A stretch of 64,000 nucleotides of DNA from Amphiscolops sp. MND2022 (lineage: Eukaryota). The stretch is from NCBI GenBank assembly GCA_964187785.1, contig OZ076411.1:75950001-76014000 (forward strand), in the 5' to 3' direction. Positions 7,262 through 42,221 of the stretch are shown piece after piece (the first letter of the stretch is position 1; every line of letters begins with the position of its first letter). The notes under the pieces are model-generated. The model was not told where the DNA came from. It was given only the letters and a program-made list of their open reading frames with translations, and did not search any database. The position numbers and the translations under genes are program-made.

Positions 7262-9194
7262 GGGGTCTTCAGCACCGCAAAAGTTCTGAAGCCGTTTTAT
7301 CATCTCAGCCCAACGTTCATATTCGCTGCGGTTTCTCGACTTCTCGGGGCACCAAGGCTGCCTAGTGACACTGTAGTCCCCATCGAGGAAGCAATGGACT
7401 CAGTATCTGACATAGGGTCCTCTCTTTCAGCCGATGTTGTACGAGTGCCCAACGTCACTGAATCAGCAGTGGTTTCATCATATGCTGTTTCTTCTTCTTG
7501 TTCTGATTGGGAAGCTTCATCGACTTCGTTTGTGCTACTGGAAGTTGTTTTTGGGGCGCTCGTATTGGGCTCATCCGTGCATCTGCATGGGTCGACTTCT
7601 GCTCAACGGGATCTCCTGAAAATGAAGTGTACATGGCGTCTCTGATGATCTCCCGTTGTCTCTTCAAAATATTGCTTCATTGCTGAATCCTCCAATGGAA
7701 CAACGTGATGATGGTCCGCAGTTGCTACACTGTGACCCGTGTCGGACCTAAAGGCCCGCTGCAACTCTTGGAATCTTGCTGGCATTGTCCCGGATGTGAG
7801 TGTCCCAAACTTGTCGAGTTATCTTTGGTCCAACTTTGAAATTCTGTGTTTTAATGTGCTTGCTGAGTGCGGAATTGAAATTGAACTGAGGATCGTCTTT
7901 TCCCGTCCCTGTTTATTGGGGAACAGAAGCTTGGGTTTCCTCAACCCAGTTTGCTTTGTAAACAATTCGTGGCATTTAGAGATTAATGCATTGGTCTCCT
8001 CTGTTTTCTCAAAGAAACTCTCGTAGAAGTGCCCTTTTTTGTGCTCATGTTACCGTATGATTGTCCCAACCTCCACTTTGTCATTGTGCTCGGTTGTTGT
8101 CTTCAAGACGGTGCCCAATCTGCAATTGTTGTCAAATAGTACCGGGAAAATTGACAGAGACGCGAGGTGCAGGTATGTGAAAATATCGGAGACGCCATGT
8201 ACAAGTCTTTTTCTGATCGTTTCTGCTAGTTTCGCAAGTTACTCTATGCTGGGCTGTCCTTCGAACCTGCTCTTCTGACGGGCTTTCGACTCTTTCCGGC
8301 CGGCAACCTTGTTACGCTCCTCATATGCTAAAATTTCTTCAAACATTGTGCTGTAGCTAACCTTGTGTGACCAGGTTGTTTGTCAACGCATCCACTTTAC
8401 GAACATTTCCAGTGTAGGCAGCAGCTTCTGCATCGAACTATGGGTATAATTGTTTGACTCTCTGTAAGTACGAAAGATTCCGCCTAGGTCCTTGAGGTTT
8501 TTTAAGTTGGTTGGTATCTTGGAATCCTTTTCTTACGAACCGTCTTCGAAAATGCCTGATTTCTGTTGCCAGAGTACTTACATAATACTCATTAAATTCT
8601 TCCAGCATTTGGGAACTTTTGACCCCGAGGGAGGTAGTTTGTGACAGCATGGTCAATTCTGGTGAGAATTCCGTAGGCGATTGCTTGTGTTGGACCGTTA
8701 GAATGATGTGTTCAAGAAATTCTTGCAGGTGCCTCCTTTTGTTAGTAAGTCGGAGAGGACAATTACCACAATGAAACACCGTGATTCGAGCGTTCTGGGT
8801 TCAGTAAAAGGACATGAGGAATTTTCTGTGGACATCTTCTAACTCGGGATGCATTTTATCTAGGTGCTGACTGTTTTTTACCTTTGTTTGGCAAATCGTG
8901 CAAAGTCGGAAATCGAATTTGCTGCCCTGGGTAACCTTCTTCTCAGGTTTTCTCCCCTTTTTCGGAGTCGTTCAAGGTTCATTGCTTGGTCCTGGGGTTG
9001 GCTCAGTTTTCCATTGGAGACTCATTTGACAGGAGAGACAGGTCCAAATTCACTTCTGGCGGGAAACTTGTTTCATTTTGTTGCATATTTTGGGTTTCTT
9101 GGTCTAACATTTGTTGTGTCTGTTCCCCAAGTTGATCCATTGCATCGATTGTTGAAGTGTCCAAACCTGTTGGTATTCGTTTGGAGGAACTCAT
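7262..9194 (-). pseudogene. Zinc-finger/tyrosine-recombinase pseudogene, subfamily E
   Basis: Manual translation: CTICQTKVKNSQHLDKMH...KFLMSFY*TQ...FHCGNC...RRHL; DNNCRLGTVL; HEHK; DTGHSVATADHHHV; ERWAEMIKRLQNFCGAEDP. All collinear with subfamilies A, B and C. Confidence 0.8.
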
Positions 9195-9695
9195 TTTGAC
9201 TTTTGGAGTCCTTTGTTTCGCTTTAGTAGTGGTTAATTCGAATTTTGATTGAGGATGACTAACAACCGACTGATTCGTACACAGCGACTCTGAAAATGTT
9301 ATTGACCAATGATTTAATAAGGTTAATCAATGTTTCTTTAATGAAAGGACTCAGAAATATGAATGGACAACTAATAAGAGTCAAAGACGCATTTAAAGTG
9401 TGAAAATTCGCACTCAGCTGATTACCAAAGTAGTGAAAACCTCTCCGTATCTGTGTACATAGCGTCTCCAATGTTTCAAAAATTGCGGAGTGTTTGAATT
9501 GGGGCCGAAAATTTCTGAACAAAATTTATGCTCAAATGGGCGGCAACTAAAGGCTAAAAAAGTGTCAAGTTCAAAAGTTTACTCTGTGAGCTTAAATATC
9601 AGAAAGACTATGGGTACTCCGTTGTTTTTGACACAGAGAGACGCTTTGTACGATTTTGGAAAAATGCTGGAGTACACAGGGTCTTTATTCGTCTT
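7262..9695 (-). mobile_element. YR element unit E1 (Crypton-like), 3' end interrupted by the BEL LTR
   Basis: YR pseudogene plus an arm with CGTATCT (9446) and CGTCTCC (9463), ending in CGTCTT against a GAT tract. Confidence 0.7.
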
Positions 9696-9729
9696 GATGA
9701 TGATGTTGCTGATGCTCATTATGATGATG
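9696..9729 (+). repeat. Degenerate (GAT)n junction tract E1/A1
   Basis: GATGATGATGTTGCTGATGCTCATTATGATGATG. Confidence 0.8.
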
Positions 9730-10189
9730 TTTATCGGAGACGCTCGGTCAAAAATTCAGACAATATTAGGCACTCTGACCCCTTTTTGTGATTATACAGA
9801 TACGCTTTGAAAGTTTTATTTTGTCAAAATGAGAATATAGATGCTTTTTTGATACTAACATGAGTGACAATTACGGGTATAGAGGCGTTTAATTAGAATT
9901 CAACTTTTGACTTCTTTCTTTTTTACCTTCCTATGATTATTTTCTTCCAGTCCCACCGTATTTCTAACTAATAAAGAGTTTCCAACGATTACTTTAAAGG
10001 TCCATTGATGTGCATATAGAGACGTTTCATACTTCCAAGGAAGACTATCAGATAACCTTCAACCCACTTTGGTAAACAGAGACGTTCTGGTTATAACTCA
10101 AGTTACATATCAAGGTAACATATCATGAACTCAAATCATTCAAACAACAAGTAGTAGGGGCAAATACAATGTCACAAACTCAAATCAAA

Positions 10190-12121
10190 TCAGTTTTTCG
10201 TGTTTTTCATTACATTTGAAAGCTTTTTAGTAACCTTATCAAGTACCTTCTCACGATCAGCATTACTGGGCTTCATCAGCTTGCATAGGTCTCTGAGTTG
10301 GCCCCGGCCTGTGTAGAACGGAGCTGCAACATACTTTGGTAAACAGTTCCTCGAGAAATGGTTGCAAAGGATCTGCAGGTCCTTTGAATTTCATCAATTT
10401 TCCACCTATACCGTTTCAATTTGTCGCATCGTTTCCTCTAGTTTTCAATGGTCTTTCTGTTTCCCATTTGACCTTTACCCCTGGATCGGACTTATAATCT
10501 TCATCTTCTTGGTCACTAGGGACTGGGCTTGGAACATCATCTTCACAAATGTCATCATCGTCAACCAATAAGGAGTTGTTGTTGGCGTCTTCATTGTCAG
10601 GTGTCGGAGCGCCTCCGACGACGTTTTCTTCCTGTGTATCACCAACGTTTCCCGTGTCCATAGTTTCTTCTTCACTTTCGTGTTGCTCAGGACTGTCCTG
10701 TTGCTCAACTGGTGGTGGAGGCGGGGGATCGTCTCCGGCCACGGAGCAGCTTTCGGGGTCATCAATTGCTCTTCTAAGAAGCTTTCAATTTCATTATCGG
10801 TCGCCGGTTCCTTCTTGTTGGTGTTGGACGGAAAAGCGAGCTTAGTCGTCAGACCATTGTTTTCCTCCTGGAAGTATTGATGAAGGTCATCTACCCATTT
10901 TCTATTTTCTTTTGTTATCCGTATGGAATTGGGAAACTTCACCCCAGTTTTGTGCTCGAATGAAGTCATAACCTTCTTCTCTTGCATGACTTTATAGTCC
11001 TCAAAGGTCAAGTTCAGCAATGCACATATTCTGCAGTTCTATTCTGAATGGATTAAAAACACCAAAAGGCATAAATATTCGAGGTAACTGAACGAGCTGT
11101 AGACGTTCTGACCCAGGATTTCTTTAACCATTTGACGAAGATGGCTAACTTGGTACAAATTTGGCACCGAATCGAACCTGGCTTGCATACGTCGATTAAC
11201 CTCTTTTGAAGCCTCCTTTGCAGTCTTTTTCAGCACGTTTCTGACCTCTCCTTTGAACAAAGCCATGTTGAATCTCAATCTTTTTTGTTTATAGGAGTTG
11301 AAAACTCGAGAAAACGATTGAATTCAAACATTAATTTCCGCATTGTTTGGAACGTGTAGTTTTTTTCCGACTTGATTCGATAAAATGTTGACTTGACTGC
11401 CTCGGGTTTCCTCAAAAAGGACGTTCCACTTAGAATTTGAGCCAAAAATTTCTTCTGGATGCGGGTCATGTTTTGATCACCGGCCTCGTTCCGGTTCCCA
11501 TTATACTCTTCGAGCAGTTTATGGAGGTTGAGAGATTTTCCTCGCCGTATACCAGGAATGTCAAAGCGGAAGTGTGAGGGGAATTCGTCCATGGATTTGG
11601 GGTTTACTTTGATAAATTCATGCTTTCTGCAACTCTTTTTGTGTTTCTTCTTACCAGTGAATCTTATGAAGCAGGCGATGCATTGGTAAAGTGTGATGTA
11701 AACACACAAATCCTTGTAGCATAAACAGAAAGCAAGAATTTTCGTTGTTGGGTTGTGAGATTATGGCTCTTGGAGAAATGCAGTCTCAGATTCGCCACGT
11801 TTGTAAGGCAAAGTACACACTGTTTTACCCGTGGTTGTTTGGGCCATTTGTCTTGCAATTGGTTTCGCTGCCTCGGCGCGTCGTTGTTTGTGGCTCATTT
11901 GAATCACTTGGTTTCCTTGGTTCAGAAACTATCTCATTGGGCAACTGAGCTTGCGTAGGCATATCAGAATCATCCAAAATTCGGCTTGAACATGCGTTGA
12001 CGGACTCCATGATATCCATACAAGTTTTGTTCACAAGAGCGTTTGTACTCGGAGAATACGCCAACCCGGCAATTTCTGTGAGGTTGGAAATACAATCGAA
12101 AGACGTATCAGCTTGTGACAT
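10190..12121 (-). pseudogene. Zinc-finger/YR pseudogene A1
   Basis: SNLTEIAGLAYSP; CVLCLTNVANLRLHFSKSH; HSE*NCRI; FEHKTG; 198-nt in-frame deletion relative to A3. Confidence 0.85.
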
Positions 12122-12310
12122 GGTGTCTGAAAATACAAGGTTTTGAAATTTCACATGAACTTAGATAAAAGGTGCAAATAGTTGACAGCGCGTCTCTGGC
12201 GTGTTTACTTTCAAATCACACTCACTTTGACAAATATTATATGACCGCTTATTGTGCGAGAGTGCGTACAAATTACCTGCAGCGATGAGAAAACGAAGCT
12301 TGAGCGATTC

Positions 12311-12410
12311 TGATTGGTTCTTACGATAATAAAGAGAATTCAGGTCACGTGATATTACGTCAGCAAGCATACTATTATCTTCCCTACTGTTGAAACGTCT
12401 CTATATTCAC
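12311..12410 (-). promoter_or_regulatory. Putative promoter block of subfamily A (CCAAT box, CACGTG E-box, CRE-like site)
   Basis: TGATTGG 12311, CACGTG 12346, TTACGTCA 12355; a similar block lies upstream of gene C. Confidence 0.35.
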
Positions 12411-12631
12411 TCAAAGCAGTTGAAGCGAGTCTATATTCTGAAAACGATTTTTTGAAGCGTGAATGAATCGAACTAAAAACTAGGCCGAAAAGTTTTAGAT
12501 TGCTTCGCGATTCAATAACGAATATCGAAAAAGTTGTACCATTTGAAAAAAAGAAAAAAATTCTGAAATACTTTCCATCCGACGACTAAAATTGCCAGAG
12601 AGACTTTCTGACCCCCCTTTGGAGTTTCCTG

Positions 12632-12864
12632 NNNNNNNNNNNNNNNNNNNNNNNNNNNNNNNNNNNNNNNNNNNNNNNNNNNNNNNNNNNNNNNNNNNNN
12701 NNNNNNNNNNNNNNNNNNNNNNNNNNNNNNNNNNNNNNNNNNNNNNNNNNNNNNNNNNNNNNNNNNNNNNNNNNNNNNNNNNNNNNNNNNNNNNNNNNNN
12801 NNNNNNNNNNNNNNNNNNNNNNNNNNNNNNNNNNNNNNNNNNNNNNNNNNNNNNNNNNNNNNNN
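12632..12864. other. Assembly gap (N run)
   Basis: 233 Ns. Confidence 1.
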
Positions 12865-13053
12865 TTTGACTCTTTTTAGTGTCAATACTATACGTTGTGA
12901 CCCCTCAGTCGGATTATATCAGAGACGCTCCAGCAAAATCAGGGAAGAAATTACAGAGAATGAATCTCGTTTGTTTTCAATGTTTCTACGGACGTGCTTC
13001 GCTGAACTTTCTTCGGATTATAGTAGACCCTTTCACGCTATGGGACAATAGAG
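12865..13053 (+). mobile_element. Truncated YR-element arm resembling the unit C left end, fused to BEL sequence
   Basis: Similar to 28851-29091 and nearly identical to 21310-21498; ends at CAATAGAG. Confidence 0.75.
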
Positions 13054-15620: not shown

Positions 15621-18025
15621 GGGGTCTTCAGTACCGCAAAAGTTCTGAAGCCGTTTTATCATCTCAGCCCAACGTTCATATTCGCTGCGGTTTCTCGACT
15701 TCTCGGGGCACCAAGTCTGGCTAGTGACACTGTAGTCCCCATCGAGGAAGCAATGGACTCAGTATCTGACATAGGGTCCTCTCTTTCAGCCGATGTTGTA
15801 CGAGTGCCCAACGTCACTGAATCAGCAGTGGTTTCATCATATGCTGTTTCTTCTTCTTGTTCTGATTGGGAAGCTTCATCGACTTGGTTTGTGCTACTGG
15901 AAGTTGTTTTTGGGGCGCTCGTATTGGGCTCATCCGTGCATCTGCATGGGTCGACTTCTGCTCAACGGAATCTCCTGAAAATGAAGTGTACATGGCGTTT
16001 CTTCAAAATATTGCTTCATTGCTGAATCTTCCAATGGAACAACGTGATGACGGTCCGCAGTTGCTACACTGTGACCCGTGTCGGACCTAAAGGCCCGCTG
16101 CAACTCTTGGAATCTTGCTGGCATTGTCTCGGATGTGAGTGTCCCAAACTTGTCGAGTTATCTTTGGTCCAACTTTGAAATTCTGTGTTTTAATGTGCTT
16201 GCTGAGTGCGGAATTGAAATTGAACTGGGGATCGTCTTTTCCCGTCCCTGTTTATTGGGGAACAGAAGCTTGGGTTTCCTCAACCCAGTTTGCTTTGTAA
16301 ACAATTCGTGGCATTTAGAGATTAATACATTGGTCTCCTCTGTTTTCTCAAAAAAACTCTCGTAGAAGTGCCCTGTTTTGTGCTCATGGGACCGTATGGT
16401 TGCCCCAACCTCCACTTTGTCATTGTGCTCGGTTGTTGTCTTCAAGACGGTGCCCAATCTGCAATTGTTGTCAAATAGTACCAGGAAAATTGACAGAGAC
16501 GCGAGGTGCAGGTATGTGAAATTATCGGAGACGCCATGTACAAGTCTTTTTCTGATCGTTTCTGCTAGTTTCGCAAGTTACTCTATGCTGGGCTGTCCTT
16601 CGAACCTGCTCTTCTGACGGGCTTTCGACTCTTTCCGGCCGGCAACCTTGTTACGCTCCTCGTATGCTAAAATTTCTTCAAACATTGTGCTGTAGCTAAC
16701 CTTGTGTGACCAGGTTGTTTGTCGACGCATCCACTTTACGAACATTTCCAGTGTAGGCAGCAGCTTCTGCATCGAACTATGGGTATAATTGTTTGACTCT
16801 CTGTAAGTACGAAAGATTCCGCCTAGGTCCTTGAGGTTTTTTAAGTTGGTTGGTATCTTGGAATCCTTTTCTTACGAACCGTCTTCGAAAATGCCTGATT
16901 TCTGTTGCCAGAGTACTTACATAATACTCATTAAATTCTTCCAGCATTTGGGAACTTTTGACCCCGAGGGAGGTAGTTTGTGACAGCATGGTCAATTCTG
17001 GTGAGAATTCCGCAGGCGATTGCTTGTGTTGGACCGTTAGAATGATGTGTTCAAGAAATTCTTGCAGGTGCCTCCTTTTGTTAGTAAGTCGGAGAGGACA
17101 ATTACCACAATGAAACACCGTGATTCGAGCTTTCTGGGTTCAGTAAAAGGACATGAGGAATTTTCTGTGGACATCCTCTAACTCGGGATGCATTTTATCT
17201 AGGTGCTGACTGTTTTTTACCTTTGTTTGGCAAATCGTGCAAACTCGGAAATCGAATTTGCTGCCCTGGGTAACCTTCTTCTCAGGTTTTCTCCCCTTTT
17301 TCGGAGTCGTTCAAGGTTCATTGCTTGGTCCTGGGGTTGGCTCAGTTTTCCATTGGAGACTCATTTGACAGGAGAGACAGGTCCAAATTCAGTTCTGGCG
17401 GGAAACTTGTTTCATTTTGTTGCATGTTTTGGGTTTCTTGGTCTAACATTTGTTGTGTCTGTTCCCCAAGTTGATCCATTGCATCGATTGTTGAAGTGTC
17501 CAAACCTGTTGGTATTCGTTCGGAGGAACTCATTTTGACTTTTGGAGTCCTTTGTTTCGCTTTAGTAGTGGTTAATTCGAATTTTCAATGAGAATGACTA
17601 ACAACCGACTGATTCGTACACAGCGACTCTGGAAATGTTATTGACCAATGATTTAATAAGGTTAATCAATGTTTCTTTAATGAAAGGACTCAGAAATGTG
17701 AATGGACAACTAATAAGAGTCGAAGACGCATTTAAAGTGTGAAAATTCGCACTCAGCTGATTACCAAATTAGTGAAAACCTCTCCGTATCTGTGTACATA
17801 GCGTCTCCAATGTTTCAAAAATTGCGGAGTGTTTGAATTGGGGCCGAAAATTTCTGAACAAAATTTATGCTCAAATGGGCGGCAACTAAAGGCTAAAAAA
17901 GTGTCGAGTTCAAAAGTTTACTCTGTGAGCTTAAATATCAGAAAGACTAGGGGTACTCCGTTGTTTTTGACACAGAGAGACGCTTTGTACGATTTTGGAA
18001 AAATGCTAGGGTCTTTAATCGTCTT
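15621..18025 (-). mobile_element. YR element unit E2 (duplicate of E1)
   Basis: HEHKTG in ORF 16158-16457; GHSVATADRHHV in ORF 15930-16124. Confidence 0.75.
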
Positions 18026-18059
18026 GATGATGATGTTGCTGATGATCATTATGATGATG
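18026..18059 (+). repeat. Degenerate (GAT)n junction tract E2/A2
   Basis: GATGATGATGTTGCTGATGATCATTATGATGATG. Confidence 0.8.
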
Positions 18060-21000: not shown

Positions 21001-21094
21001 ATTTGAAAAAAAGAAAAAAATTCTGAAATACTTTCCATCCGACGACTAAAATTGCCAGAGAGACTTTCTGACCCCCCTTTGGAGTTTCCTGGGT
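18060..21094 (-). mobile_element. YR element unit A2 (gene 18650-20581; same catalytic deletion as A1)
   Basis: Copy of A1, but retains about 130 bp (about 18140-18270) that is absent from A1 and present in A3. Confidence 0.85.
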
Positions 21095-28773: not shown

Positions 28774-28822
<49 letters not shown>

Positions 28823-28830
28823 GATGATGA
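28774..28830 (+). repeat. (GAT)n junction tract B0/C
   Basis: About 19 units with one GGT variant. Confidence 0.95.
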
Positions 28831-29473: not shown

Positions 29474-31553
29474 TTAGTATCCCAAACTCTCCATTACGTT
29501 ACAGACTTTTTTGACGGCTTTCTCAGCCAAAATGCTGGCTTCTCTCTCACTGGCACCCTGGGCTTGGGCCAATTGTTTGAGCTCCCCACGAAGAATGTAC
29601 CGCATGCGGTCGCAAACTTGATGAAACAGGGCAATTAGCTGTTTCCGCAGTGGATCGTCAGGGTCTTTGAACTTCAAAAGTTTGACACGAATCTCGGACC
29701 ATCTTTTGGCTTTCTCGGGAAGTGCGTCAACGGGTTCATCTTTTGGTGGATTCTTCTTCTTGGCTTTCTTCGGTGGCTCGTAATCGTCAACATCCGGAAA
29801 CGAGTCGTCCTTCGCGAGGGATAGGGTGTCGGATGCGCTATTTTCTTTGTCCGAATCCTCTGTTCTGTTCTCCTCAGCTGCATCTGGGGTCGCAGCGTCT
29901 CGTGAATGTCTTCGTCGCATCGTTCCTCATTTTCATCTTCTCGACCATCTAGTTGTTCCTCCACCTCCTCCTGAGAATCCTCAACCTCTGGCATGGGCTT
30001 TGGCGGGTCATCGTCCGCAACATAACAGCTTTCGTGGTCCTCAATCAAGTTCAATTTTTTGTCGAGAAACTTTGTGATCTCTTCAACTGTGGCCGGTTTC
30101 AGGAAGTACTTGTTTCGTGTGACTTCAGAATGACCGGTATTCAGTTGGTAACGGATCGCATCAGTGCCATCCACAAAGTTTGTTTTGTTCCGGTAACTGT
30201 CCCAGGCTTTACGAACGTTGTCCGGGTTGTAAAGCCTGTCATCAATGGCAAAAAACCGTTTTATGATCTCCTTTAGGTACTTTGCTTGACAAGTGAATTT
30301 TTTGTTACTTGGAGATGGAAACGCAAACTTTGAAGCCTCCCCATCTTTTTCTTCAACAAATTTTCCGTGAAGATCTTCGATCCATTTGCGGTTTTGATCA
30401 GTTATTCGAATGAAATTGGGGAAGTGGGACCCAGTTTTGTGCTCGAATGTAGTGAGCACTTTCTTATTCTTCATGTCCTCAATATCTTCTTTGAAAGTTG
30501 CAACAAGGTCCTATGCGGCAATTCGACTCCGAGTGCACCAGATAGACCAGCAGGCTCAGGTATTCCACGTAAGTGAAAGCTTCCTGTGGGTGATTTTGCA
30601 GCAGTTCCTTGACCATTTGCCTGAGATGGGCAACTTGATACAGGTTGGGTACTTTGTCAAACCGCTGTATCATCCTGCTGTTGACTTTTTTGCAGACTTT
30701 TCAGCTGTGTTTGGTAGTAGGGATCTCAGCTCTCCAGTGATCAAGCCGGGGTTGAAACGATACTCTTTCTGCTTGTAACACTTGCAATACTGAATCAGTC
30801 TAGACAACTCAAAGAGGAACTTGCGCATGGTTCGGAAGGTGTAATTTTTCTCTAATTTAACCTGATTGAACACAATTTTGAGGTGCATCGGCTTCCTGAA
30901 GTGTTTTGTCACATCCACAACTCTGATTAGGAAGTTTTGTTGGAAGCGTGTCAAGAGTTGATCTCCTGAATCAATTCGATGTTCATCATACTCTGTGAGT
31001 AAACGATGCACTTGGGAGATGTTTCAAGATGGTGTGAGTGCACATAGTCCTTGATGTCAATTTTGGAAATTCATCCTTGGAATCCACTAGCACACGAATA
31101 AATTGAGGATTTTTGTAGGAATTTTTGTGCTTCTTTTTCCCCGTAAAACGTACACAAAAAGTGTTTCACTGGTACACCGTAGACGTGCAGATCTGCGTTC
31201 TGCGAAACGATAACAAAAAATTGTGATGCTTTTTCGAAAGCTGTTGTGTTTTCGTCAGATGCTGTCTCATATTGGCATAATTCCTGGAGCAAACCAGACA
31301 ACTCTTGAGACGATCCTGCAGCTTCACTTTGTTTTTTGGGCGCAACTGGTGTTGATAAGGATTGTTTACTCTCAATTGATGGCTCGTTATCATTGTTTGG
31401 GGCATGTTCGCCGACAATTTCCGCATTTTCGTTGTCTGCTTCTTCTAGCATCTGACTTGTAACTCGACGAAGCGCATCGTTTGCAATTGGGGAATAACAA
31501 AGCCCAGCAACTTCTGTGAGGTTCGACAACTCATCGAAGCTTCGTTCTGACAT
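29474..31553 (-). pseudogene. Zinc-finger/YR gene C, frameshifted but retaining R, K, R, H and Y motif residues
   Basis: SNLTEVAGLCYSP; CLVC...HLTKTQ; HSESNCRIG; FEHKTG; YNPDNVRKAW; TGHSEVTRNKYF. Confidence 0.88.
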
Positions 31554-31748
31554 AAATGTAAGGAAGGGTTAATTCAGAAAAGAAAAAATTTTCAGCAATG
31601 AATGATTGAATTTGTAAAAGATGACAGAGCGTCTCTTGTATGTATAGTTTCTTTACAGGTTGATGAAACAGCGACTATACGCAGTGAAAATAATGTGCAA
31701 ACAAGCTTGTGTGGTAATATTGCTATGACAACTCTGAATGGAGAGCTC

Positions 31749-31850
31749 TGATTGGGTCAAAAATGAATAAAATGTGAGGTTGAAATCAGCACATGAATGA
31801 CGTCATGGATGCTAGTATTATAATTCCCTACTGTCGGAAAGTCTCTATTA
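31749..31850 (-). promoter_or_regulatory. Putative promoter block of unit C (CCAAT box, TGACGTCA)
   Basis: TGATTGG 31749, TGACGTCA 31798, TATTAT..TTCCCTACTGT..GAAA.GTCTCTAT shared with subfamily A. Confidence 0.35.
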
Positions 31851-32100
31851 TCTCATAATGACATCATTGCGTCTCTATAGCCACTTGACTAAAAACGTAC
31901 CACGAATTGCATATGAAAACTGAACGTTCTTTTCAAATGTAGTTTGTAATTGTAAATGAAATTGTTAAATTGAAAAAAATCGAATCTTTCAAAAAACATT
32001 GGCTTTTTGACTAGACTATCCAACCCCCAGAAAACGGCCCCAGAGAGATGCTTTGACCCACTTTTTCGAATTTTTGAGTGTCGGATCGTCTAGGATAAAA

Positions 32101-32106
32101 ATGATG

Positions 32107-32140
<34 letters not shown>
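32101..32140 (+). repeat. (GAT)n junction tract C/B1
   Basis: ATGATGAGGATGATG... Confidence 0.95.
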
Positions 32141-35100
32141 GAGACTCTTTGGTGACTATACTAAAAAATAAGGTCGTCAGAGCGTTTCTGAGGCCTTTAG
32201 TCTGTAGCACTGGATCGTCTCTGGGAATAAGTTAGTATTTTTCTAAAGATTCACGTTCCAGCTATATTATGGGTTATTTCAGTTGGGATTGGGCTATACA
32301 AAAGTGCAATTGTCAGAAATTAATTTTCAATGGTACATGATTACGAGAGGTGGCAATAGAAGCGCTTTGACTATTTTGGATGAATATAGAGACGCGCTGT
32401 GAGCGCAAGTGGTTATAAGACGCCCTCTAGCGGCTTTTTGTTGTTAAGTTATAGTTAACGTATTTGCTTAGTTATCCAATAGCAGGCCTTGATATTAGTA
32501 TTCTAAAGTTCGCACCACTAATGTGGTTTGTTGTTTATATAATTTTCGTAAACCATAACCAATTATTTGCTTGTTCTACTTCAAATTGAAACATTTCAGA
32601 GACGTTTTGACTCACTATCACAAACCAATTTTTAATTTTTCCAAAACACCTGTACAACATTTACAAATTTTTACTCTTGATGGCTGACGACACTCTCGAT
32701 ACCGTCAGCAACCTTACTGATCTCGCTGGTTTGTCCTATTCACCGCATACGGAACGTGTCATCAACAATTGTGTGGAGTCCATGCTGCAAGATGCCCCTC
32801 TTGAGTGTGATGCAAATGAGGACGTTCTCAGTGGTGCGGAAACTGAAACCCTGTTGGAAAATGTTGAAATGTCAACTTCAACCCCTGTGCCTGCCGAAAC
32901 GAAAAAGAAAAGAAAAAGAAGCCGTCGAAACCGACAAAAATTGCTGCTAAAAGGCAAAAGGCCCAAGCAACCTACAAAGGTAGCATGTGCGTTATGCAAC
33001 GTTGCGTACGCAATAATGAGACAACACCTCTCACAAACGCATCAAAATTTGATGGAATGCAAACGTAAGTTTCTCATAAGCTTCTACAGGACTTCAATTT
33101 GCAGTTCAACGGTGTACCAGTGCAATACGTGTCTCATCAGGTTCACAGGCAAAGGCAAACACTTGAAACTTTGCAAAAAACTAGCAATTGTGAGAGTCAA
33201 AGCAACTTGCACTAACGATTTCCCAGAAAGCCTGAAAAATGCCTCTATCTGGAATCCAAATTCTGGTACTGGCAAAGCGACTTCTTTGCTGGAAGAGTAC
33301 AACATCAATCGAGAGGAAGGTGGGGACCCTGAGTTAGCGCGGTTCCAAAGGACTTTTTTGACTACAGTTCTTAAAGAAACACAATTTTTGCGCGTCCCAA
33401 TGAAGATAAAAGGTGCTTTGGGTCAGATTCAAAAGCAGCGGAGGTATATCTACCAAACCATGAGAAAACTAATAATTGAACTGCTCAGAATGGTGGAGTT
33501 CCTGAAGGCATACAAGGCGAAAGAACTCAGAATCAATGGACCATTGGTCGAGGGAACCATCAGAACTCTGCTGAGAAAGACAGCAAAAAAGCAGCACAAG
33601 AAGTTAATGAAAGGAGTGTCAAGAAGTTCAACAATGTCCCGAGTCTGTACCAGGTGGCCTATTTGCGAAAAGATGTCCTGGAGATGCTGGACAAGTTCAG
33701 TCACATTGGTTTCGAATATAACGAGTACCTATGCTTGGTGCTCTTTGTCATTCATTCATAATCAAACAGTCGAATTGGGGCTCTTTTGGATTTAGAGTAC
33801 TCATCCTATGCGGAGATGGAACAGGACCAAATCCCAACTACATTTGACGAGAAAACCGGGTCCAAACTTCCAAATTTCTTGAGATTTCGTGCCCAAACCA
33901 AGCGATTAGTCGACCAATTTCATGAGAAGTTCCGTGAAGAGTTCAACAAAGAGCCGCTTTGAACATTCCCCTCATCTACAAACAAGAGGTTTTCATGCCA
34001 AGCAACGTACCTCAAAACGGCGCTCGCGAAATTCTTTTCCATAACTGACAAGCCCTACAATCCGGACAATGTGTGAAAGGCGTGGGATTCGTACAAGGTG
34101 AAAGCAAACTTCCTTCCAGAGGAGAACTTGGCAAGGCTCTATCAAATGAATACCGGCCACTGCGAGGCCACGCGTCACAAGTATTATGTACAACCGGCCA
34201 CTGACGGCGAAATTGCAAAACTTTTGGATAATCAACTCGACTTGATAAATGACCCTCAATCCTGCTATGTCACAGAAAACGATCCACCTAAAGCAGTTCC
34301 AGAGACAGCCAATGAGCCAAAAGTTTTCGAAGAAGACGCGGAAGAGGGAGACCACGACCACAATCCTTCATGCGAAGGATTAGAACATCAAAAAACCGCT
34401 CTGACAGACGATTTTGATGAAACAGATGAAAATGGCAACATTTGTACTACTTCATGTGAACCTGGCTCTCCAATGGCGGTATGCAACCAAGCTCTTCTGA
34501 AATGGAGGCAGTGCAGATGGAAAATCCGCAGACGAAAGGCCCCGGTAAGAGACATGAAAAGCAAACTACGGGCAAAGACGATGCCAGATGGTATGCCATA
34601 CAAGAGAGTTTGATGAAATTCAGAGGTGCAGACCCTCTACAACCACATTTAGTGAAACTATTTGACATCGTTTGCCAAAAGAAGAAGTACCTCTCGCGGA
34701 GGGAGCTGAGACTGGAGTGCAAACACTTCCCAGGACTTAAAGATTCTGACAAAGAACTGCTCTGTGATAAGGCCGTGAAAAAACTGTCGAACGTGATGAA
34801 GAATGCAAAGTGGTAGAATTGATTGATTGGCGCTTGTTTGTTTGTTTTTAGTTTGATATTTGAGAGGAGTATATGAGTCTTCAGTTTTGAGTTTGTATTA
34901 TTTGCTGATTTGTTGAGATTTTGCCTATTATATGTAGAAATCCACTTTTTTCGACAGAACGTCTATATTATCTCATTTCGTCTTAGAGTATAGTATAAGG
35001 ACTTGCTGTGGAACTCAGCGTCTCTATTGTCACCCAAACAATGGATATTTCAAGGTCCTTCCTAAAGCCGTATGTGTCTCATACAGCTGATACCAACTCC

Positions 35101-35453
35101 TTTTGATGTCAATTTTGCAATTAGACCTTAAACGGAGTCAAAAATCAACTTTTAAAAATCGGTCATTGGGACTCGTATCCGGACTTGCTGATTTCCTCAA
35201 CGTCTCTATAATCTCTATTTAGCCTACTTTTTAGGGAATTTCACACAGTTTTTTTCTGGGGTCCTATTTACTACGAATTTTTTTTGGGAGTCACTAACAT
35301 TGCTCCCATAGCTGAAACTAGCTGAAACTTGATGAGTTATGGTACAGGAGAGTTTCAGAGACCAAAGCATCGAAATTCGTCAGCGCGCTTCCACTATTTA
35401 TCTATAACGTCTCCTATAATCTCGACTAGGTAGTCAAAGCGTATCTATCATCC
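32141..35453 (+). mobile_element. YR element unit B1, complete, about 3.31 kb
   Basis: GAT-flanked; left GAGACTCTTTGG, right CAAAGCGTATCTATCATCC. Confidence 0.88.
32680..34816 (+). pseudogene. Zinc-finger/YR pseudogene B1
   Basis: ORFs 32677-33795, 34098-34613, 34481-34816; the R-II codon is TGA. Confidence 0.88.

Positions 35454-35500
<47 letters not shown>
35454..35500 (+). repeat. (GAT)n junction tract B1/B2
   Basis: Perfect repeat of about 15 units. Confidence 0.97.
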
Positions 35501-35501
<1 letters not shown>

Positions 35502-38500
35502 GAGACGCTTTGGTGACTAGACTAAAAAATAAGGTCGTCAGAGCGTTTCTGAGGCCTTTAGTCTGTAGCACTGGATCGTCTCTGGGAAAAAGTTAGTATT
35601 TTTCAAAAGATTCACGTTCCAGCTTTATTATGGGTTATTTCAGTTGGGATTGGGCTATACAAAAGTGCAAATGTCAAGAATTATTTTTCAATGGTACATG
35701 ATTACGAGAGGTGGCAATAGAAGCGTTTTGACCATTTTGGATGAATATAGAGACGGGCTGTGAGCTCAAGTGGTTATAAGACGCCCTCTAGCGGCTTTTT
35801 GTTGTCAAGTTATAGTTAACGTAATTGCTTAGTTATCCAATAGCAGGCCTTGATATTAGGATTCTAAAGTTCGCACCACTAATTTGGGGTTTGTTGTTTA
35901 TATAATTTTCGCAAACCATAACCAGTTAATTGCTTGTTCTACTGCAAATTGAAACATTTCAGAGACGTTTTGACTCACTATCACAAACCAATTTTTAATT
36001 CTTCCAAAACACCTGTACAACATTTACAAATTTTTACTCTTGATGGCTGACGACACTCTCGATACCGTCAGCAACCTTACTGATCTCGCTGGTTTGTCCT
36101 ATTCACCGCATACGGAACGTGTCATCAACAATTGTGTGGAGTCCATGCTGCAAGATGCCCCTCTTGATTGTGATGCAAATGCGGACGTTCTCAGTGGTGC
36201 GGAAATTGAAACCCTGTTGGAAAATGTTGAAATGTCAACTTCGACCCCTGTGCCTGCCGAAACGAAAAAGAAAAGAAAAAGAAGCCGTCGAAACCGACAA
36301 AAATTGCTGCTAAAAGGCAAAAGGCCCAAGCAACCTACAAAGGTAGCATGTGCGTTATGCAACGGTGCGTACGCAAACATGAGACAACACCTCTCACAAA
36401 CGCATCAAAATTTGATGGAATGCAAACGTAAGTTTCTCATAAGCTTCTACAGGACTTCAATTTGCAGCTCAACGGTGTACCAGTGCAATACGTGTCTCAT
36501 CAGGTTTACAGGCAAAGGCAAACATTTGAAACTTTGCAAAAAACCAGCAATTGTGAGAGTCAAAGCAACTTGCACTAACGATTTACCAGAAAGCCTGAAA
36601 AATGCCTCTATCTGGAATCCAAATTCTGGTACTGGTAAAGCGACTTCTTTACTGGAAGAGTAGAACATCAATCGAGAGGAAGGTGGGAACCCTGAGTTAA
36701 CGCGGTTCCAAAGGACTTTTTTGACCGCAGTTCTTAAAGGAACACAATTTTTGCGCGTCTCACTGAAGATAAAAGGTGCTTTGGGTCAGATTCAAAAGCA
36801 GAAGAAGTATACCTACCAAACCATGAGAAAACTAATGTTTGAACTGCTCAGAATGGTGGAGTTCCTGAAGGCATACAAGGCGAAAGAACTCAGAATCAAT
36901 AGACCATTAGTCGAGGGAACCATCAGAACTCTGCTGAGAAAGACAGCAAAAAAAGCAGCACAAGAAGTTAATGAAAGGCGTGTCAAGACGTTCAGCAATG
37001 TCCCGAGTCTGTACCAGGTGGCCTATTTGCGAAAATATGTCCTGGAGATGCTGGCCAAGTTCAGTCACATTGGTTTCGAAGATAACGAGTACCTACGCTT
37101 GGTGCTCTTTGTCATTAATTGCGAATCAAACTGTCGAATTGGGGCTCTTTTGGATTTAGAGTACTCATCCTATGCGGAAATGGAACAGGACCAAATCCCA
37201 ACTACATTTGACGAGAAAACCGGGTCCAAACTTCCAAATTTCTTGAGATTTCGTGCCCAAACCAAGCGATTAGTCGACCAATTTCATGAGAAGTTCCGTG
37301 AAGAGTTCAACAAGGAGCCGCTTTGAACATTCCCCTCATCTACAAACAAGAGGTTTTCATGCCAAGCAACGTACCTCAAAACGGCGCTCGCGAAATTCTT
37401 TTCCATAACTGACAAGCCCTACAATCCGGACAATGTGTGAAAGGCGTGGGATTCGTACAAGGTGAAAGCAAACTTCCTTCCAGAGGAGAACTTGGCAAGG
37501 CTCTATCAAATGAATACCGGCCACTGCGAGGCCACGCGTCACAAGTATTATGTACAACCGGCCACTGACGGCGAAATTGCAAAACTTTTGGATAATCAAC
37601 TCGACTTGATAAATGACCCTCAATCCTGCTATGTCACAGAAAACGATCCACCTAAAGCAGTTCCAGAGACAGCCAATGAGCCAAAAGTTTTCGAAGAAGA
37701 CGCGGAAGAGGGAGACCACGACCACAATCCTTCATGCGAAGGATTAGAACATCAAAAAACCGCTCTGACAGACGATTTTGATGAAACAGATGAAAATGGC
37801 AACATTTGTACTACTTCATGTGAACCTGGCTCTCCAATGGCGGTATGCAACCAAGCTCTTCTGAAATGGAGGCAGTGCAGATGGAAAATCCGCAGACGAA
37901 AGGCCCCGGTAAGAGACATGAAAAGCAAACTACGGGCAAAGACGATGCCAGATGGTATGCCATACAAGAGAGTTTGATGAAATTCAGAGGTGCAGACCCT
38001 CTACAACCACATTTAGTGAAACTATTTGACATCGTTTGCCAGAAAAAGAAGTACCCCTCGCGGAGGGAGCTGAGACTGGAGTGCAAACACTTCCCAGGAC
38101 TTAAAGAATCTGACAAAGAACTGCTCTGTGATAAGGCCGTGAAAAAACTGTCGAACGTGATGAAGAATGCAAAGTGGTAGAATTGATTGATTGGCGCTTG
38201 TTTGTTTGTTTTTAATTAATATTTGAGAGGAGTATATGAATCCTCAGTATTGAGTTTGTATTATTTGCTGATTTGTTGAGATTTCGCCTATTATATGTAG
38301 AAATCCAGTTTTTTCGACAGAACGTCTATATTATCTCATTTCGTCTTAGAATATGGTATAAGGACTTGCTGTGGAACTCAGCGTCTCTATTGTCACCCAA
38401 ACAATGGTTATTTCAAGGTCCTTCCTAAAGCCGTTTGTGTCTCATACAGCTGATACCAACTCCTTTTGATGTCAATTTTGCAATTAGAACTTGAACGGAG

Positions 38501-38814
38501 TCAAAATTCAACTTTTAAAAATCGGTCATTGGGACTCGTATCCGGACTTGCTGATTTGCTCAACGTCTCTATAATCTCTATTTAGCCTGCTTTTTAGGGA
38601 ATTTCACACAGTTTTTTTGGGGTCCTAATAACTACAAATTTTTTTTGGGAGTCATTAACATTGCTCCCATAGCTGAAACTAGCTGAAACTTGATGAGTTA
38701 TATTTCAGGAGAGTTTCAGAGACCAAAGCATCGAAATTCGTCAGCGCGCTTCCACTATTTATCTATAACGTCTCCTATAATCTCGACTAGGTAGTCAAAG
38801 CGTATCTATCATCC
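35501..38814 (+). mobile_element. YR element unit B2, complete, about 3.31 kb
   Basis: Direct copy of B1 at offset about 3363. Confidence 0.88.
36043..38180 (+). pseudogene. Zinc-finger/YR pseudogene B2
   Basis: ORFs 36040-36663, 36721-37326, 37462-37977, 37845-38180. Confidence 0.88.

Positions 38815-38879
<65 letters not shown>
38815..38879 (+). repeat. (GAT)n junction tract B2/A3
   Basis: Perfect repeat of about 21 units. Confidence 0.97.
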
Positions 38880-41800
38880 TTTATCGGAGACGCTCCGTCA
38901 AAATTTCAGACAATATTAGGCACTCTGACCACTTTTTGTGATTATACAGATACGCTTTGAAGTTATTGCCCTTCTGGAGTCTCCCAAAAGATAGAAAGTG
39001 GACTGTTGAGCACGCCTGAGTTTAGAAGAAACGTCACGAATCTTATGCCGGTGGACTCGAGTCCTATTATTGCAGGAATTAGATAATCTAGAAATTTTAT
39101 TACGTCTATGTCAAAAGAAGAATATAGATGCTTTTTGATACTAACATGAGTGACAATTACGGGTTCAGAGGCGTTTAATTAGAATTCAACTTTTGATCTC
39201 TTTCAAGTTTTTTTTAACCTTTTTACGATTATTTTCTTCCAGTTTCACCGTATTTCCAACTGATAAAAAGCGTTTAACGACTATTTTAAATGCCCATTGA
39301 TGTGCATAGAGAGACGTTTCAAACTTTCAGGGAAGACTATCAGATATCATTTAACCAACTTCGGTAATTAGAGACGTTCTGGTTAAAAATCAAGTTACAT
39401 ATCAAGGTAACATATCATGAACTCAAAGCATTCAAACAACAAGTACTGGCTAAGTAGCCAAAAGAAATATAATAGTAGGGGTAAATACAAAGAATCAAAC
39501 GGAAATCAAATCAGTACTTCATGTTTTTTATCGCATTTGAAAGCTTTTTAGTAGCCTTGTCAAGTACTTTCTCACGATCAGCATTACTCAGCTTCATCAG
39601 CTTGCACAGGTCTCTGAGTAGGCCCCGGCCTGTGTAGAACTGAGCAGCAACAACTTTGGTAAACAGTTCCTCGAGAAATAGTTGCAAGGGATTTGCAGGT
39701 CCTTTGAATTTTATCAGTTTTTCATTTGTGGCATCCCATTTCGTCGCATCGTTCTCTCTAGTTTTCAGTTGTCTTCTGACTCCCATTTGGCTTTTACCTC
39801 TGAAACGGGCTTATAATCTTCATCTTCTTGGTCACTAGGGACTGGACTTGGAACATCATATTCACAAATGTCATCATCATCAACCACCAAGGATTTGTTG
39901 TTGGCGTCTTCATTATCAGGTGTCAGAGCAACTCCGTCGACGTTTTCTTCCTGTGTATCTCCAACGTTTCCCGTGTCCATAATGTATTCTTCATTTTCTT
40001 CCGGCTCAAGATTGTCCTCTTGCTCAACTGGTAGTGGGGGCGGGGGATCTTCTTCGGTCTCGTAGCAGCTTTCGTGGTCATCAACTATCTTCAATTGCTC
40101 ATCTAAGAAGCATTCATTTTCTTCATCGGTCGCCGGTTTCAGGTAGTATTTTTGACGGGTGGCCTCACAAGTGCCAGTGTTCATTTGGTATAGCAGGGCA
40201 TTTTGACCTGTGACAGACTGAGACTTCTCGAAGAAGGTACCCCATGCTTTTCTTACTTTGTCGGGGTTATACAGCTTGTCGTCAATTCGAAAGTATTTGT
40301 AATTGACCTCATAGAAGTATTTGGCCTGGAAGGTGAACTTCTTGTTGGTGTTTGACGGAAACGCTAGCTTAGGTGACAGACCATTGTTTTCTTCCTTGAA
40401 GTATTGATGAAGGTCATCTACCCACTTTCTATTCTCGTTCGTTATTCGTATGAAATTGGGAAACTTCGCGCCCGTTTTGTGCTCGAAAGAAGTCATGACC
40501 TTCTTCCTGCATGGTTTTGTAGTCCTCAAAGGACAAGTTCAACAATGACCCGATTATGTAGTTCAATTCTGAATGGATTACAAACACCAGAATGCATAAA
40601 TAATCGTGGTAGCTGAACAAGCTGTAGACGTTCTGACCCAGCATTTCCCTAACCATCTGACGAAGATGGCTAACTTGGTACAAATTTGGCACTGAATCGA
40701 ACCTGGCTTGCATACGTCGATTAACCTCTTTTGAAGCCTCCATCGCAGTCTTTTTCAGCAGGTTTCTGACCTCTTCTTTGAACAAAGCCATGTTGAATCT
40801 CAATTCGTTTTGTTCATAGGAGTTGCAGAACTCGAGAAAACGATTGAATTCAAACATTAATTTCCGCATTGTTTGGAACTTGTAATTTTTTTTCGACTTG
40901 ATTCGATTCAATGTTGACTTGACAGCCTCGGGTTTCCTCAAAAAGGACGTTCCACTACGAATTTGAGCCAAAAATGTCTTCTGGAAGCGGGTCATGTTTT
41001 GATCACCGGCCTCGTTCCGGTTCTCATCATACTCTTCGAGCACTTTAGGGTGATTGAGAGATTTTTCTCGTCGTATACCAGGAATTTCAAAGCGGAAGTG
41101 TGAGGGGAATTCGTCCATCCATTTTTTTGTTAATTCAAAAATCCTAGTAGCATAAAAATAGCAAGAATTTTCGTTGTTGGGTTGTGGGATTATGGTTTTT
41201 AGACAAATGCTGTCTCAGATTTGCCACTCTTGTCAGGCAAAGTACACACTGTTTTACCCGTGGTTGTTTAGGCCGTTTGCCTTGCAACTGGTTTCGCTGC
41301 AATTGTCTGCCTCGGCGCGTTGATGTTTGTGGATAATTTGAATCACTTGGTTTCTTTGGTTCAGAAACTATCTCATTGGGTGACTGAGCGTGAGTTGGCA
41401 TATCAGAATCATTCAAAATTTGGCTTGAACATGCGTTGACGGACTCCATAAAATCCATACAAGTTTTGTTCACAAGAGCGTTTGTACTCGGAGAATACGC
41501 CAACCCGACAATTTCTGTGAGGTTGGAAATACAATCGAAGGACGTATCAGCTTGTGACATGGTATTCGAAAATACAAGATTTGGAAATTTCACATGAACT
41601 TAGATAAAAGGTGCAAATAATGGACAGCGCGTCTCTGCCGTGTTTACTTTCAAATCACATTCAGTTTGACAACGATTATTTGACCGCCTATTGTGCGAGA
41701 GTGCGTACAAATTACCTGCAGAGATGAGAAAAGGAACCTTAAGCGGTTTTGATAGGTTCTTACGCTAATAAAATAAGAGAATTTAGATCACGTGATATTA

Positions 41801-42097
41801 CGTCAGCAAGCATATGATTATCTTCCCTACTGTTGAAACGTCTCTATATTCACCCAAAACAGTTGAAGCGAGTCTAAATTCTGAAAAAGAATTTTTAAGC
41901 GTGAATGAATCGAACTGAAAACTACGCCGAAAAGTTTTAGATGGCTTAGCAATTCAATAACGAATATCGAAAAAACTGTACCTTTTGAAAAAAAGAAAAA
42001 AATTCTAAAATACATTCCAACCCCGACTAAAATTCCCAGAGAGACTGTCTGACCCCCCCCCCTTCGGAGTTTCCTTGGTGCTGGAACGTATCTGATC
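38880..42097 (-). mobile_element. YR element unit A3, complete, about 3.22 kb
   Basis: Left TTTATCGGAGACGCTCC; right GGAACGTATCTGATC followed by a degenerate GAT tract. Confidence 0.85.
39511..41560 (-). pseudogene. Zinc-finger/YR pseudogene A3
   Basis: FEHKTG; YNPDKVRKAW; TGTCEATRQKYY; R-I changed to I (NYIIG); frameshifts. Confidence 0.87.
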
Positions 42098-42125
42098 ATC
42101 ATGATGGTGATGATGATGAATATGA
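42098..42125 (+). repeat. Degenerate (GAT)n tract closing the array
   Basis: ATCATGATGGTGATGATGATGAATATGA. Confidence 0.75.
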
Positions 42126-42221
42126 CGACAAACACGCTCATCCATCTGTCGACGTGACAGTTGTTAATGTTCGGTTGCCTAAAAAGGGAACCAACTGTCC
42201 AAAAATTCGCATTGTGGATGT

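What the first reader, a model, noticed from the sequence alone, without database searches (positions are those of the whole stretch)
7262..42125. Microsatellite-jointed array of divergent tyrosine-recombinase elements
Seen: at least seven independent-looking units plus two duplicates (E, A, [E, A], B0, C, B1, B2, A3). Complete units are 3.2-3.3 kb and are abutted end to end, with a (GAT)n tract at every resolved junction (9696, 18026, 28774, 32101, 35454, 38815, 42098). They fall into four clearly diverged subfamilies of one YR gene. Known: Crypton DNA transposons encode a lone YR; from memory, microsatellite-targeting Crypton families (CryptonV-type) exist, and I have not verified the relationship. 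Inference: a family that repeatedly integrates into (GAT)n and regenerates its own target on both sides, building a cassette-like landing pad shared by several subfamilies. This is the best candidate for an undescribed system in the window.
Basis: partly seen in the sequence, partly recalled or inferred. Interest (0 to 1): 0.9.

Follow-up and report, generated by a model that had tools for sequence, protein, structure and literature searches.

The report
Microsatellite-targeting recombinase transposon array
This stretch is a graveyard of small jumping genes that each encode one DNA-recombining enzyme and always sit between (GAT/TCA)n simple repeats; a kind of element (Crypton-type, microsatellite-specific) that has been catalogued before but hardly studied.

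Summary
Window 7262-42119 is an end-to-end array of about 3.3-kb units with a (TGA)n tract at every resolved junction.

- **Subfamilies:** four are present here (A, B, C, and E, which is an F-clade member). All window copies are dead.
  - E is truncated.
  - B0 is 5'-truncated and holds a 945-bp internal tandem repeat.
  - A C-like terminal fragment follows each N gap.
  - The second E+A pair belongs to an 8361-bp segmental duplication that also copies BEL/Pao DNA.
  - Both gaps fall where a junction microsatellite is expected. They interrupt no ORF and were not filled.
- **Other loci:** eight loci from other assemblies show the same rule for seven subfamilies (27-51% aa identity).
  - Units run from (TCA)n to (TCA)n.
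  - Arrays end in (TCA)n followed by unique DNA.
  - Polarity is fixed, with family B always reversed.
  - Intact A copies are 98.6-99.5% identical at four loci.
  - One deletion derivative has six copies at three loci.
- **Prior knowledge:** microsatellite-specific "CryptonV" elements are already listed (Repbase Reports 2012, cited in PMC8869645). I could not test membership.
- **Earlier scan finding:** this scan reached the same reading on other DNA of this genome (s1-188577).

Verdict: a new member of a known kind, of moderate interest.

The parts
7262..9694 (-). Unit E: decayed, 3'-truncated member of the F clade of the recombinase family
   Evidence: tblastn with F aa 44-511 hits 9070-7639 at 36-43% identity, E 4e-86. 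A and C give 22-31%. There is no (GAT)n on the left, and a BEL/Pao gag lies at 5265-6797.
9695..9729 (.). Degenerate (TGA)n junction between E and A1
   Evidence: TRF period 3, 75% matches; sequence.
9730..12631 (-). Unit A1: dead copy with a 200-bp deletion that removes residues ~438-521, including the catalytic His and Tyr
   Evidence: It is 89-94% identical to the intact A element of L001.
12632..12864 (.). Assembly gap at the expected A1/next-unit microsatellite junction
   Evidence: Not filled.
12865..13046 (-). C-like 3'-terminal fragment (X), then the breakpoint of the 8361-bp duplication
15621..18024 (-). Unit E', the duplicate of E inside the 8361-bp segmental duplication
   Evidence: 4689-9812 against 13050-18142, 97.9%.
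18025..18064 (.). Degenerate (TGA)n junction between E' and A2
18065..21094 (-). Unit A2, the duplicate of A1 (98.8%) with the same 200-bp deletion
21095..21309 (.). Assembly gap at the expected junction
21310..21497 (-). C-like 3'-terminal fragment (X')
   Evidence: 86% identity to 28851-28979.
22185..28773 (+). Unit B0: 5'-truncated, with a 444-aa ORF (23092-24426) holding the catalytic domain and a 945-bp internal tandem repeat of about five copies (23648-28305)
28774..28830 (.). (TGA)19 junction
28831..32100 (-). Unit C: full length, with its ORF broken into pieces of 160, 113, 266 and 148 aa
   Evidence: 55-73% identity to P0003 over most HSPs, range 36-81%.
32101..32140 (.). (ATG)13 junction
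32141..35453 (+). Unit B1: full length, ORF broken
35454..35501 (.). (TGA)16 junction
35502..38814 (+). Unit B2: 97% identical to B1, ORF broken
38815..38879 (.). (TGA)21 junction
38880..42092 (-). Unit A3: full length, without the 200-bp deletion, ORF broken into pieces
   Evidence: 82-89% identity to P0004.
42093..42119 (.). Degenerate (TGA)9 at the right edge of the array, followed by DNA that is unique within the window

Best explanation
The region is a decayed composite array of small DNA transposons of Crypton type.

**What each unit is.** A unit is about 3.3 kb and encodes only one protein of about 710 aa. The protein has two N-terminal zinc-finger-like motifs, a core-binding domain plus a tyrosine-recombinase catalytic domain, an acidic linker and a helical C-terminal domain.

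**Unit ends.** Units end in short imperfect inverted arms built around GAKACGCT. They are bounded on both sides by the same-strand microsatellite, (TCA)n.

**Inferred mechanism.** This follows the published Crypton model.
1. The recombinase excises a unit as a circle by crossing over between the flanking TCA repeats.
2. It re-integrates the circle by a crossover inside another (TCA)n tract.
3. Each insertion leaves a tract on both sides.
4. An occupied microsatellite therefore keeps attracting further insertions of any subfamily, and arrays grow.
5. The asymmetric repeat fixes the orientation of insertion.

**This window.** The elements are old and dead. The array was later reshaped by a BEL/Pao insertion, an 8.4-kb segmental duplication, a deletion that fused a C-like remnant to B0, and an internal tandem repeat in B0.

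**Shown versus inferred.** Shown here: the fold and catalytic residues, the unit boundaries, the microsatellite rule, the fixed polarity, multi-locus young copies, and an amplified non-autonomous derivative. Inferred: the circle intermediate, crossover within the repeat, and choice of pre-existing tracts as targets.
For: **Fold**
- The AF2 model of P0004:195-545 has pLDDT 92.5 and pTM 0.85.
- The leading Foldseek hits in both PDB and Swiss-Prot are tyrosine recombinases, and the match spans both domains. The only other PDB rows are low-probability 14-3-3 matches (probability 0.11-0.23).

**Catalytic residues**
- R365, K392, R467, H494 and Y503 are kept in 38-41 of 43 homologues.
- PF00589 is hit by 2 distant members and SAM-like domains by 7.

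**Unit content**
- Each unit holds one ORF and no RT.

**Microsatellite rule**
- In the window the tracts lie at the junctions and nowhere else.
- L001-L007 and L009 show the same rule for subfamilies A, B, C, D, F and G.
- Arrays end in (TCA)n followed by unique DNA.

**Polarity**
- 26 non-B units have the gene forward on the TCA strand.
- All 5 B units are reversed, in two independent loci.

**Mobility**
- A copies are 98.6-99.5% identical at four loci, and homology ends inside the tracts.
- A 2388-bp deletion derivative of F with one identical breakpoint has six copies at three loci.
- The order of subfamilies differs between loci.

**Terminal motif**
- GAKACGCT occurs 23 times against 1.44 expected. 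All copies lie inside the array, several next to termini.

**Literature**
- The Crypton excision/integration model and observed Crypton excisions are in PMC3212892 and PMC9977147.
- Microsatellite-specific CryptonV is cited in PMC8869645.
Against: - No empty site, excised circle or polymorphic insertion was observed.
- The long spacers between inverted arms (45-885 bp) do not form a canonical lox-like core, so the real crossover site is unknown.
- The first His of the HxxR box is S, A or N.
- Pfam does not recognise the window proteins as recombinases, and profile search against PDB sequences finds nothing.
- Part of the array is duplication, not insertion.
- No solitary element in an otherwise plain microsatellite was seen, apart from contig L002, which is only one unit long.
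Confidence: 0.85

Rival explanations
1. The element does not seek microsatellites. Like ordinary Cryptons, it recombines at a short core such as TCATCA that matches its terminus. The long (TCA)n tracts are carried by the element, or grow afterwards by slippage and by summing donor and target repeats.
For: Ordinary Cryptons use 4-6-bp terminal direct repeats and targets. Array edges can be very short or degenerate: (CAT)5 at the L005 right edge and (TGA)9 at window 42093. Internal tracts reach 100-295 repeats, which suggests expansion.
Against: Other outer edges carry 22-33 repeats next to unique DNA. Seven subfamilies with only 27-51% identity keep the same repeat. The literature describes CryptonV as microsatellite-specific.
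Confidence: 0.2
2. The array grew mainly by unequal crossing-over or segmental duplication between the microsatellites, not by repeated integration.
For: The 8361-bp duplication includes BEL/Pao DNA. B1 and B2 are adjacent and 97% identical. L003 and L009 are arrays of a single unit type.
Against: Interleaved subfamilies with 27-51% aa identity, in different orders at different loci, cannot arise by duplication. Near-identical A and F-deletion copies have different neighbours.
Confidence: 0.1
3. Assembly artefact: the array, or its E+A duplicate, is a mis-join or retained haplotig around unsized gaps.
For: Both duplicate copies end in an N gap at the same relative position. They differ by about 1-2%, which is similar to heterozygosity in many invertebrates.
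Against: The duplication junction at 13046-13050 lies inside contiguous sequence and is a novel join. From 22185 to 42119 there are no gaps. Independent assemblies show the same architecture.
Confidence: 0.05
4. A host gene cluster of domesticated recombinase genes.
For: The protein architecture is conserved across subfamilies.
Against: Every window copy is broken. The copies are multi-locus, young and bounded by repeats. Non-autonomous derivatives have amplified.
Confidence: 0.02

Closest known systems
CryptonV (Kapitonov & Jurka 2012, Repbase Reports 12:2034; cited in PMC8869645)
   Same: It is a DNA transposon encoding a tyrosine recombinase, and it is reported to insert specifically into microsatellites.
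   Different: It is described from cnidarians, and the host of this window is unknown to me. The original report and its sequences are not in the tools, so sequence relationship, target repeat and array formation could not be compared.
Cryptons in general (Goodwin 2003; Kojima & Jurka 2011, PMC3212892; active CryptonF-1_cRei, PMC9977147)
   Same: They have a lone YR ORF, no long terminal repeats, direct repeats at both termini as the presumed crossover substrate, and site-specific targets.
   Different: Here the direct repeat is a whole microsatellite rather than 4-6 bp. The ends also carry ~13-bp imperfect inverted arms. The protein gives no hit to DUF3435 (annotated on mostly Ascomycota clusters and, from my recollection, the CryptonF recombinase domain) or to DUF3504 (called Crypton-derived in earlier finding s1-193550). 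It has zinc-finger-like N-terminal motifs instead of GCR1_C.
Cre/loxP, XerCD/dif, lambda Int, Tn1549 Int
   Same: They share the two-domain fold and the catalytic R-K-R-H-Y set. The inverted binding arms flank an asymmetric crossover region that fixes orientation.
   Different: This is a eukaryotic element. The spacer between arms at unit junctions is a variable repeat tract tens to hundreds of bp long. The first His of HxxR is replaced.
Endogenous nimaviruses of crustaceans that insert into telomere-type repeats or (AT)n (PMC10871703)
   Same: A mobile element uses its own integrase to occupy a simple-repeat niche.
   Different: Those are viral genomes of hundreds of kb, with a different YR family or a DDE transposase. 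They use a different repeat.
Integron cassette arrays
   Same: Units are placed serially by a tyrosine recombinase at a shared landing site.
   Different: Each unit here carries its own recombinase. There is no separate platform integrase, attI or promoter, and there are no attC hairpins.

Membership tests
Tyrosine recombinase superfamily | Two-domain fold (core-binding plus catalytic) | tested here: met
Tyrosine recombinase superfamily | Catalytic R, K, HxxR, H/W and Y | tested here: met
   R365, K392, R467, H494 and Y503 are kept in 38-41 of 43 homologues. The His of HxxR is S, A or N.
Tyrosine recombinase superfamily | Recombinase activity | not testable with these tools
   This needs an enzyme assay.
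Crypton DNA transposons | Lone YR gene, with no RT, RNase H or LTRs | tested here: met
   A 3.3-kb unit holds a single ~2.1-kb ORF. Pfam finds no RT.
Crypton DNA transposons | [quoted passage not shown] | tested here: met
   Same-strand (TCA)n lies at both ends of every unit. It is a long tract rather than 4-6 bp.
Crypton DNA transposons | Sequence kinship with known Crypton recombinases | tested here: inconclusive
   There is no hit to DUF3435 or DUF3504. The atlas feature search places DUF3435 clusters at 0.89-0.90.
CryptonV | Specific insertion into microsatellites | tested here: met
   Every complete unit at nine loci (the window plus eight others) is flanked by (TCA)n. Empty sites were not seen.
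CryptonV | Sequence similarity to CryptonV consensus proteins; cnidarian host | not testable with these tools
   The Repbase report is not held. All homologues are unnamed ENA, Logan or JGI proteins.
DIRS-like YR retrotransposons | RT and RNase H next to the YR | tested here: not met
   There is no second ORF or RT domain in the units.
Integron | A platform integrase with attI and promoter, and cassettes lacking their own integrase | tested here: not met
   Every unit encodes its own recombinase.

The most novel reading that the evidence does not exclude
The seven or more subfamilies (27-51% aa identity) and their non-autonomous derivatives share one recombination grammar: GAKACGCT-type inverted arms plus a TCA crossover repeat. 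Occupied microsatellites would then act as communal, self-renewing landing pads where units of different lineages are inserted, excised and perhaps swapped like cassettes. The young intact copies seen in a related assembly would be active eukaryotic integrases with a defined trinucleotide-repeat target. Neither the mixed arrays nor the reversed-polarity B lineage appears in any paper I could search.
Probability: 0.3. Interest if true: 0.7.

Novelty: new member of a known kind. Interest (0 to 1): 0.45.

Why it matters
Target-specific DNA transposons are rare in eukaryotes. Cryptons are the least understood DNA-transposon class, and their activity was first seen only in 2023 (PMC9977147).

This family offers:
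- clear unit boundaries;
- a strict trinucleotide-repeat niche;
- fixed polarity;
- an amplified non-autonomous derivative;
- intact copies about 99% identical in a sister assembly.

That would make the Crypton mechanism testable. It could also supply a eukaryotic recombinase that integrates about 3 kb into a defined simple repeat. The elements may also explain why long (TCA)n tracts break short-read assemblies at these places, since both gaps here fall at such junctions.

For this window itself the elements are dead, so the local biological effect is probably nil.

Tried and rejected
- **Pfam on window ORFs and on intact relatives:** no recombinase domain was found.
- **Profile search against PDB sequences:** only a chance MIF hit.
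- **First AF2 run with a 6-sequence alignment:** failed in the catalytic half (pLDDT below 50). Solved with a 111-sequence alignment built from the exhaustive search.
- **Rfam:** nothing in the window.
- **Alternative haplotype of L005 through a flanking ORF:** only the same contig came back.
- **Cluster look-up for names or taxa:** none, so the host organism stays unknown.
- **Literature:** Kojima & Jurka 2011 does not mention microsatellites, and the GGS 2020 review is not held.
- **L001's 218-aa ORF unit:** I considered that it equals E at DNA level. It does not. It is a deletion derivative of F, and E is a separate F-clade member.
- **Right flank 42120-45461:** I considered it as a further diverged unit, but found no protein or DNA similarity.
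- **Rejected readings:** DIRS-like retroelement (no RT), integron-like platform, and host gene cluster.
Full report
**1. The observation**

TRF finds period-3 TGA/ATG tracts at 9695, 18025, 28774, 32101, 35454, 38815 and 42093, and nowhere else in the 64-kb window.

Self-BLAST resolves three groups of repeated units between these tracts.
- A copies: 9822-12631, 18272-21094 and 39109-42079.
- B copies: 22185-28848, 32101-35501 and 35462-38862.
- One C unit: about 28831-32100.

tblastn with intact relatives shows that every unit, including the ORF-poor stretch 7660-8998 (E), encodes the same protein. A, C and E are on the minus strand and B is on the plus strand. The description is therefore correct, and the association of tracts with junctions is not chance.

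**2. Corrections to the anatomy**

- *E is truncated.* Protein homology ends near 7640 of an expected further ~1.2 kb. No (GAT)n lies on its left. The neighbouring DNA is a BEL/Pao gag (DUF1759, 5265-6797).
- *The second E+A pair is not independent.* 4689-13049 and 13050-21497 form one 8361-bp tandem duplication (97.9-98.8% identity) that also copies the BEL/Pao piece.
- *B0 is damaged.* It lacks its first ~440 bp and is joined to unassigned DNA (21498-22184). It holds a 945-bp tandem repeat of about five copies covering the C-terminal half of the ORF.
- *No unit is intact.* ORFs are split into pieces of 100-440 aa. A1 and A2 have lost residues ~438-521, which include the catalytic His and Tyr.

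**3. The assembly gaps**

By comparison with A3, sequence stops 13-17 nt before the A 5' terminus. By comparison with C, it resumes about 16 nt inside the C-like terminus. Both gaps therefore replace a unit junction where a microsatellite is expected, and they interrupt no reading frame. Long pure (TCA)n tracts are a plausible reason for the gaps. I did not fill them. I also did not fetch this locus from another assembly of the genome.

**4. What the protein is**

- *Sequence searches.* Pfam and a profile search against PDB sequences do not recognise it.
- *Family size.* An exhaustive profile search finds a small family: 144 representatives at E<=1e-3 among 1.84 billion proteins. All are unnamed ENA, Logan or JGI proteins.
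- *Structure.* With 111 of them as alignment, AlphaFold2 models residues 195-545 of the intact relative P0004 at pLDDT 92.5 and pTM 0.85.
- *Catalytic residues.* In a 43-sequence alignment, R365, K392, R467, H494 and Y503 are kept in 38-41 sequences. The His of the HxxR box is S, A or N.
- *Distant members.* A few reach PF00589 and SAM-like domains weakly.
- *Other regions.* Upstream lie two zinc-finger-like motifs, C-x2-C...H-x4-H and C-x2-C...H...C, seen in the alignment. Downstream lie an acidic linker and a helical C-terminal domain that is confidently modelled.

**5. Behaviour elsewhere**

Eight loci from other assemblies were read.
- L001, L004, L005, L006 and L007 (one long-read assembly) hold arrays made of A, B, F and a deletion derivative of F.
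- L002 is a 3.5-kb contig holding one intact C unit. It begins and ends in (TCA)25.
- L003 and L009 are arrays of subfamilies D and G, separated by (TCA) tracts of 67-295 repeats.

In every case a unit runs from (TCA)n to (TCA)n. Where an array ends inside the locus, the outer tract abuts unique DNA.

Read on the TCA strand, 26 units of A, C, D, E, F and G have the gene forward. All five B units are reversed, three in the window and two in L007. B termini nevertheless keep the same left/right polarity as the others. Polarity is thus a family property set by the ends and the repeat, not by the gene.

**6. Evidence of mobility**

- A copies at four loci are 98.6-99.5% identical over 3.4 kb, with intact 713-aa ORFs. 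Their homology stops inside the flanking tracts, while their neighbours differ.
- A 2388-bp derivative of F has lost about 0.9 kb of internal sequence, including much of the recombinase-coding region. It occurs with one identical breakpoint as six full copies at three loci, each from tract to tract. That implies mobilisation in trans through the termini.
- Subfamilies with only 27-51% aa identity are interleaved in different orders at different loci. Duplication cannot produce this.

**7. The ends**

On the TCA strand:
- Units begin, 8-9 nt after the tract, with GAKACGCT-like sequence (GATACGCT, GAGACGGT, GAGACGAT).
- Units end with its complement (AGCGTCTC and variants) 0-9 nt before the next tract.
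- The result is imperfect inverted arms of about 13 bp, of the type TATCGGAGACGCT.
- Further copies lie subterminally.

GAKACGCT occurs 23 times in the window against 1.44 expected, and all copies are inside the array.

**8. Mechanism**

The best-supported reading is the published Crypton model.
1. A unit is excised as a circle by crossover between the terminal direct repeats.
2. It is re-integrated by crossover with a matching target.

Here the repeat and the target are (TCA)n. Every insertion leaves a tract on each side, so occupied tracts stay targets and arrays form. The asymmetric repeat fixes orientation. These steps are inferred. I saw no circle or empty site. A rival in which the true target is only a short TCATCA core remains open, at about 0.2.

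**9. Relation to what is known**

Kojima (PMC8869645) states that some CryptonV families insert specifically into microsatellites. The citation is a 2012 Repbase Report on cnidarians, and that report is not held. The principle is therefore known, though barely described in searchable literature.

I could not test whether this family is CryptonV. It gives no match to DUF3435 or DUF3504. From my recollection and earlier finding s1-193550, these are the Pfam families tied to fungal Cryptons and to Crypton-derived host genes.

Another follow-up in this scan (s1-188577) reached the same reading on other DNA of the same genome. A first-reader note (s1-175727) had flagged the RGAKACG motif, and I confirmed its enrichment.

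**10. Verdict**

It is right about the nature and target of the elements, and too strong in calling the system undescribed. Not every unit here is an independent insertion. Novelty: a new member of a known kind. Interest is moderate (0.45). It rests mainly on the clean multi-subfamily evidence, the reversed B lineage, and the apparently active copies elsewhere that would make Crypton biochemistry testable.

Noticed in passing
window 23648-28305: A 945-bp tandem repeat of about five copies (94-99% identity) lies inside unit B0. It reiterates the C-terminal half of the recombinase ORF plus part of its 3' region. Its origin is unknown.
   Followed up: partly
window 1-7260 and 13050-15620: BEL/Pao retrotransposon remnant with gag (DUF1759, 5265-6797, minus strand). 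It has an internal 1709-bp tandem duplication (2097-3797 against 3806-5507) and a 440-bp repeat of two copies at 1486-2360.
   Followed up: no
window 45462-52496: An apparently complete BEL/Pao element on the minus strand with 512-bp LTRs (45462-45973 and 51985-52496, 98% identity). It has gag-protease, Peptidase_A17 and integrase ORFs, and a 134-bp repeat of three copies at 46183-46580.
   Followed up: no
window 52500-64000: AT-rich stretch (GC 34-36%) with very strong negative GC skew (-0.25 to -0.46). It contains decayed retroelement-like ORFs, including an RT-like YIDDILL motif at 57786-58154. The strand-biased composition is unexplained.
   Followed up: no
P0052 (895 aa, JGI), relative found: A distant member of this recombinase family carries an N-terminal SET domain (PF00856, E 1.2e-5). 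This echoes earlier finding s1-172834 of a histone-methyltransferase-recombinase fusion in this genome.
   Followed up: partly
L010-L015 (P0157 family, other samples): A distant relative (747 aa, about 26% identity) sits on contigs that begin in (TAA)n and end in a ~25-bp tandem repeat. This lineage may use a different microsatellite.
   Followed up: partly
L003 and L009 (ENA ERZ25067548, contig names ending _c): Arrays of a single unit type, with (TCA) tracts of up to 295 repeats, are reported by the assembler as circular contigs at very low coverage. They may be an assembly effect of tandem arrays, or possibly real extrachromosomal multimers.
   Followed up: no
window 21498-22184: A 687-bp stretch between the C-like terminal fragment and truncated B0 has no similarity to any unit or to the rest of the window. 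It is probably a deletion or rearrangement scar.
   Followed up: partly
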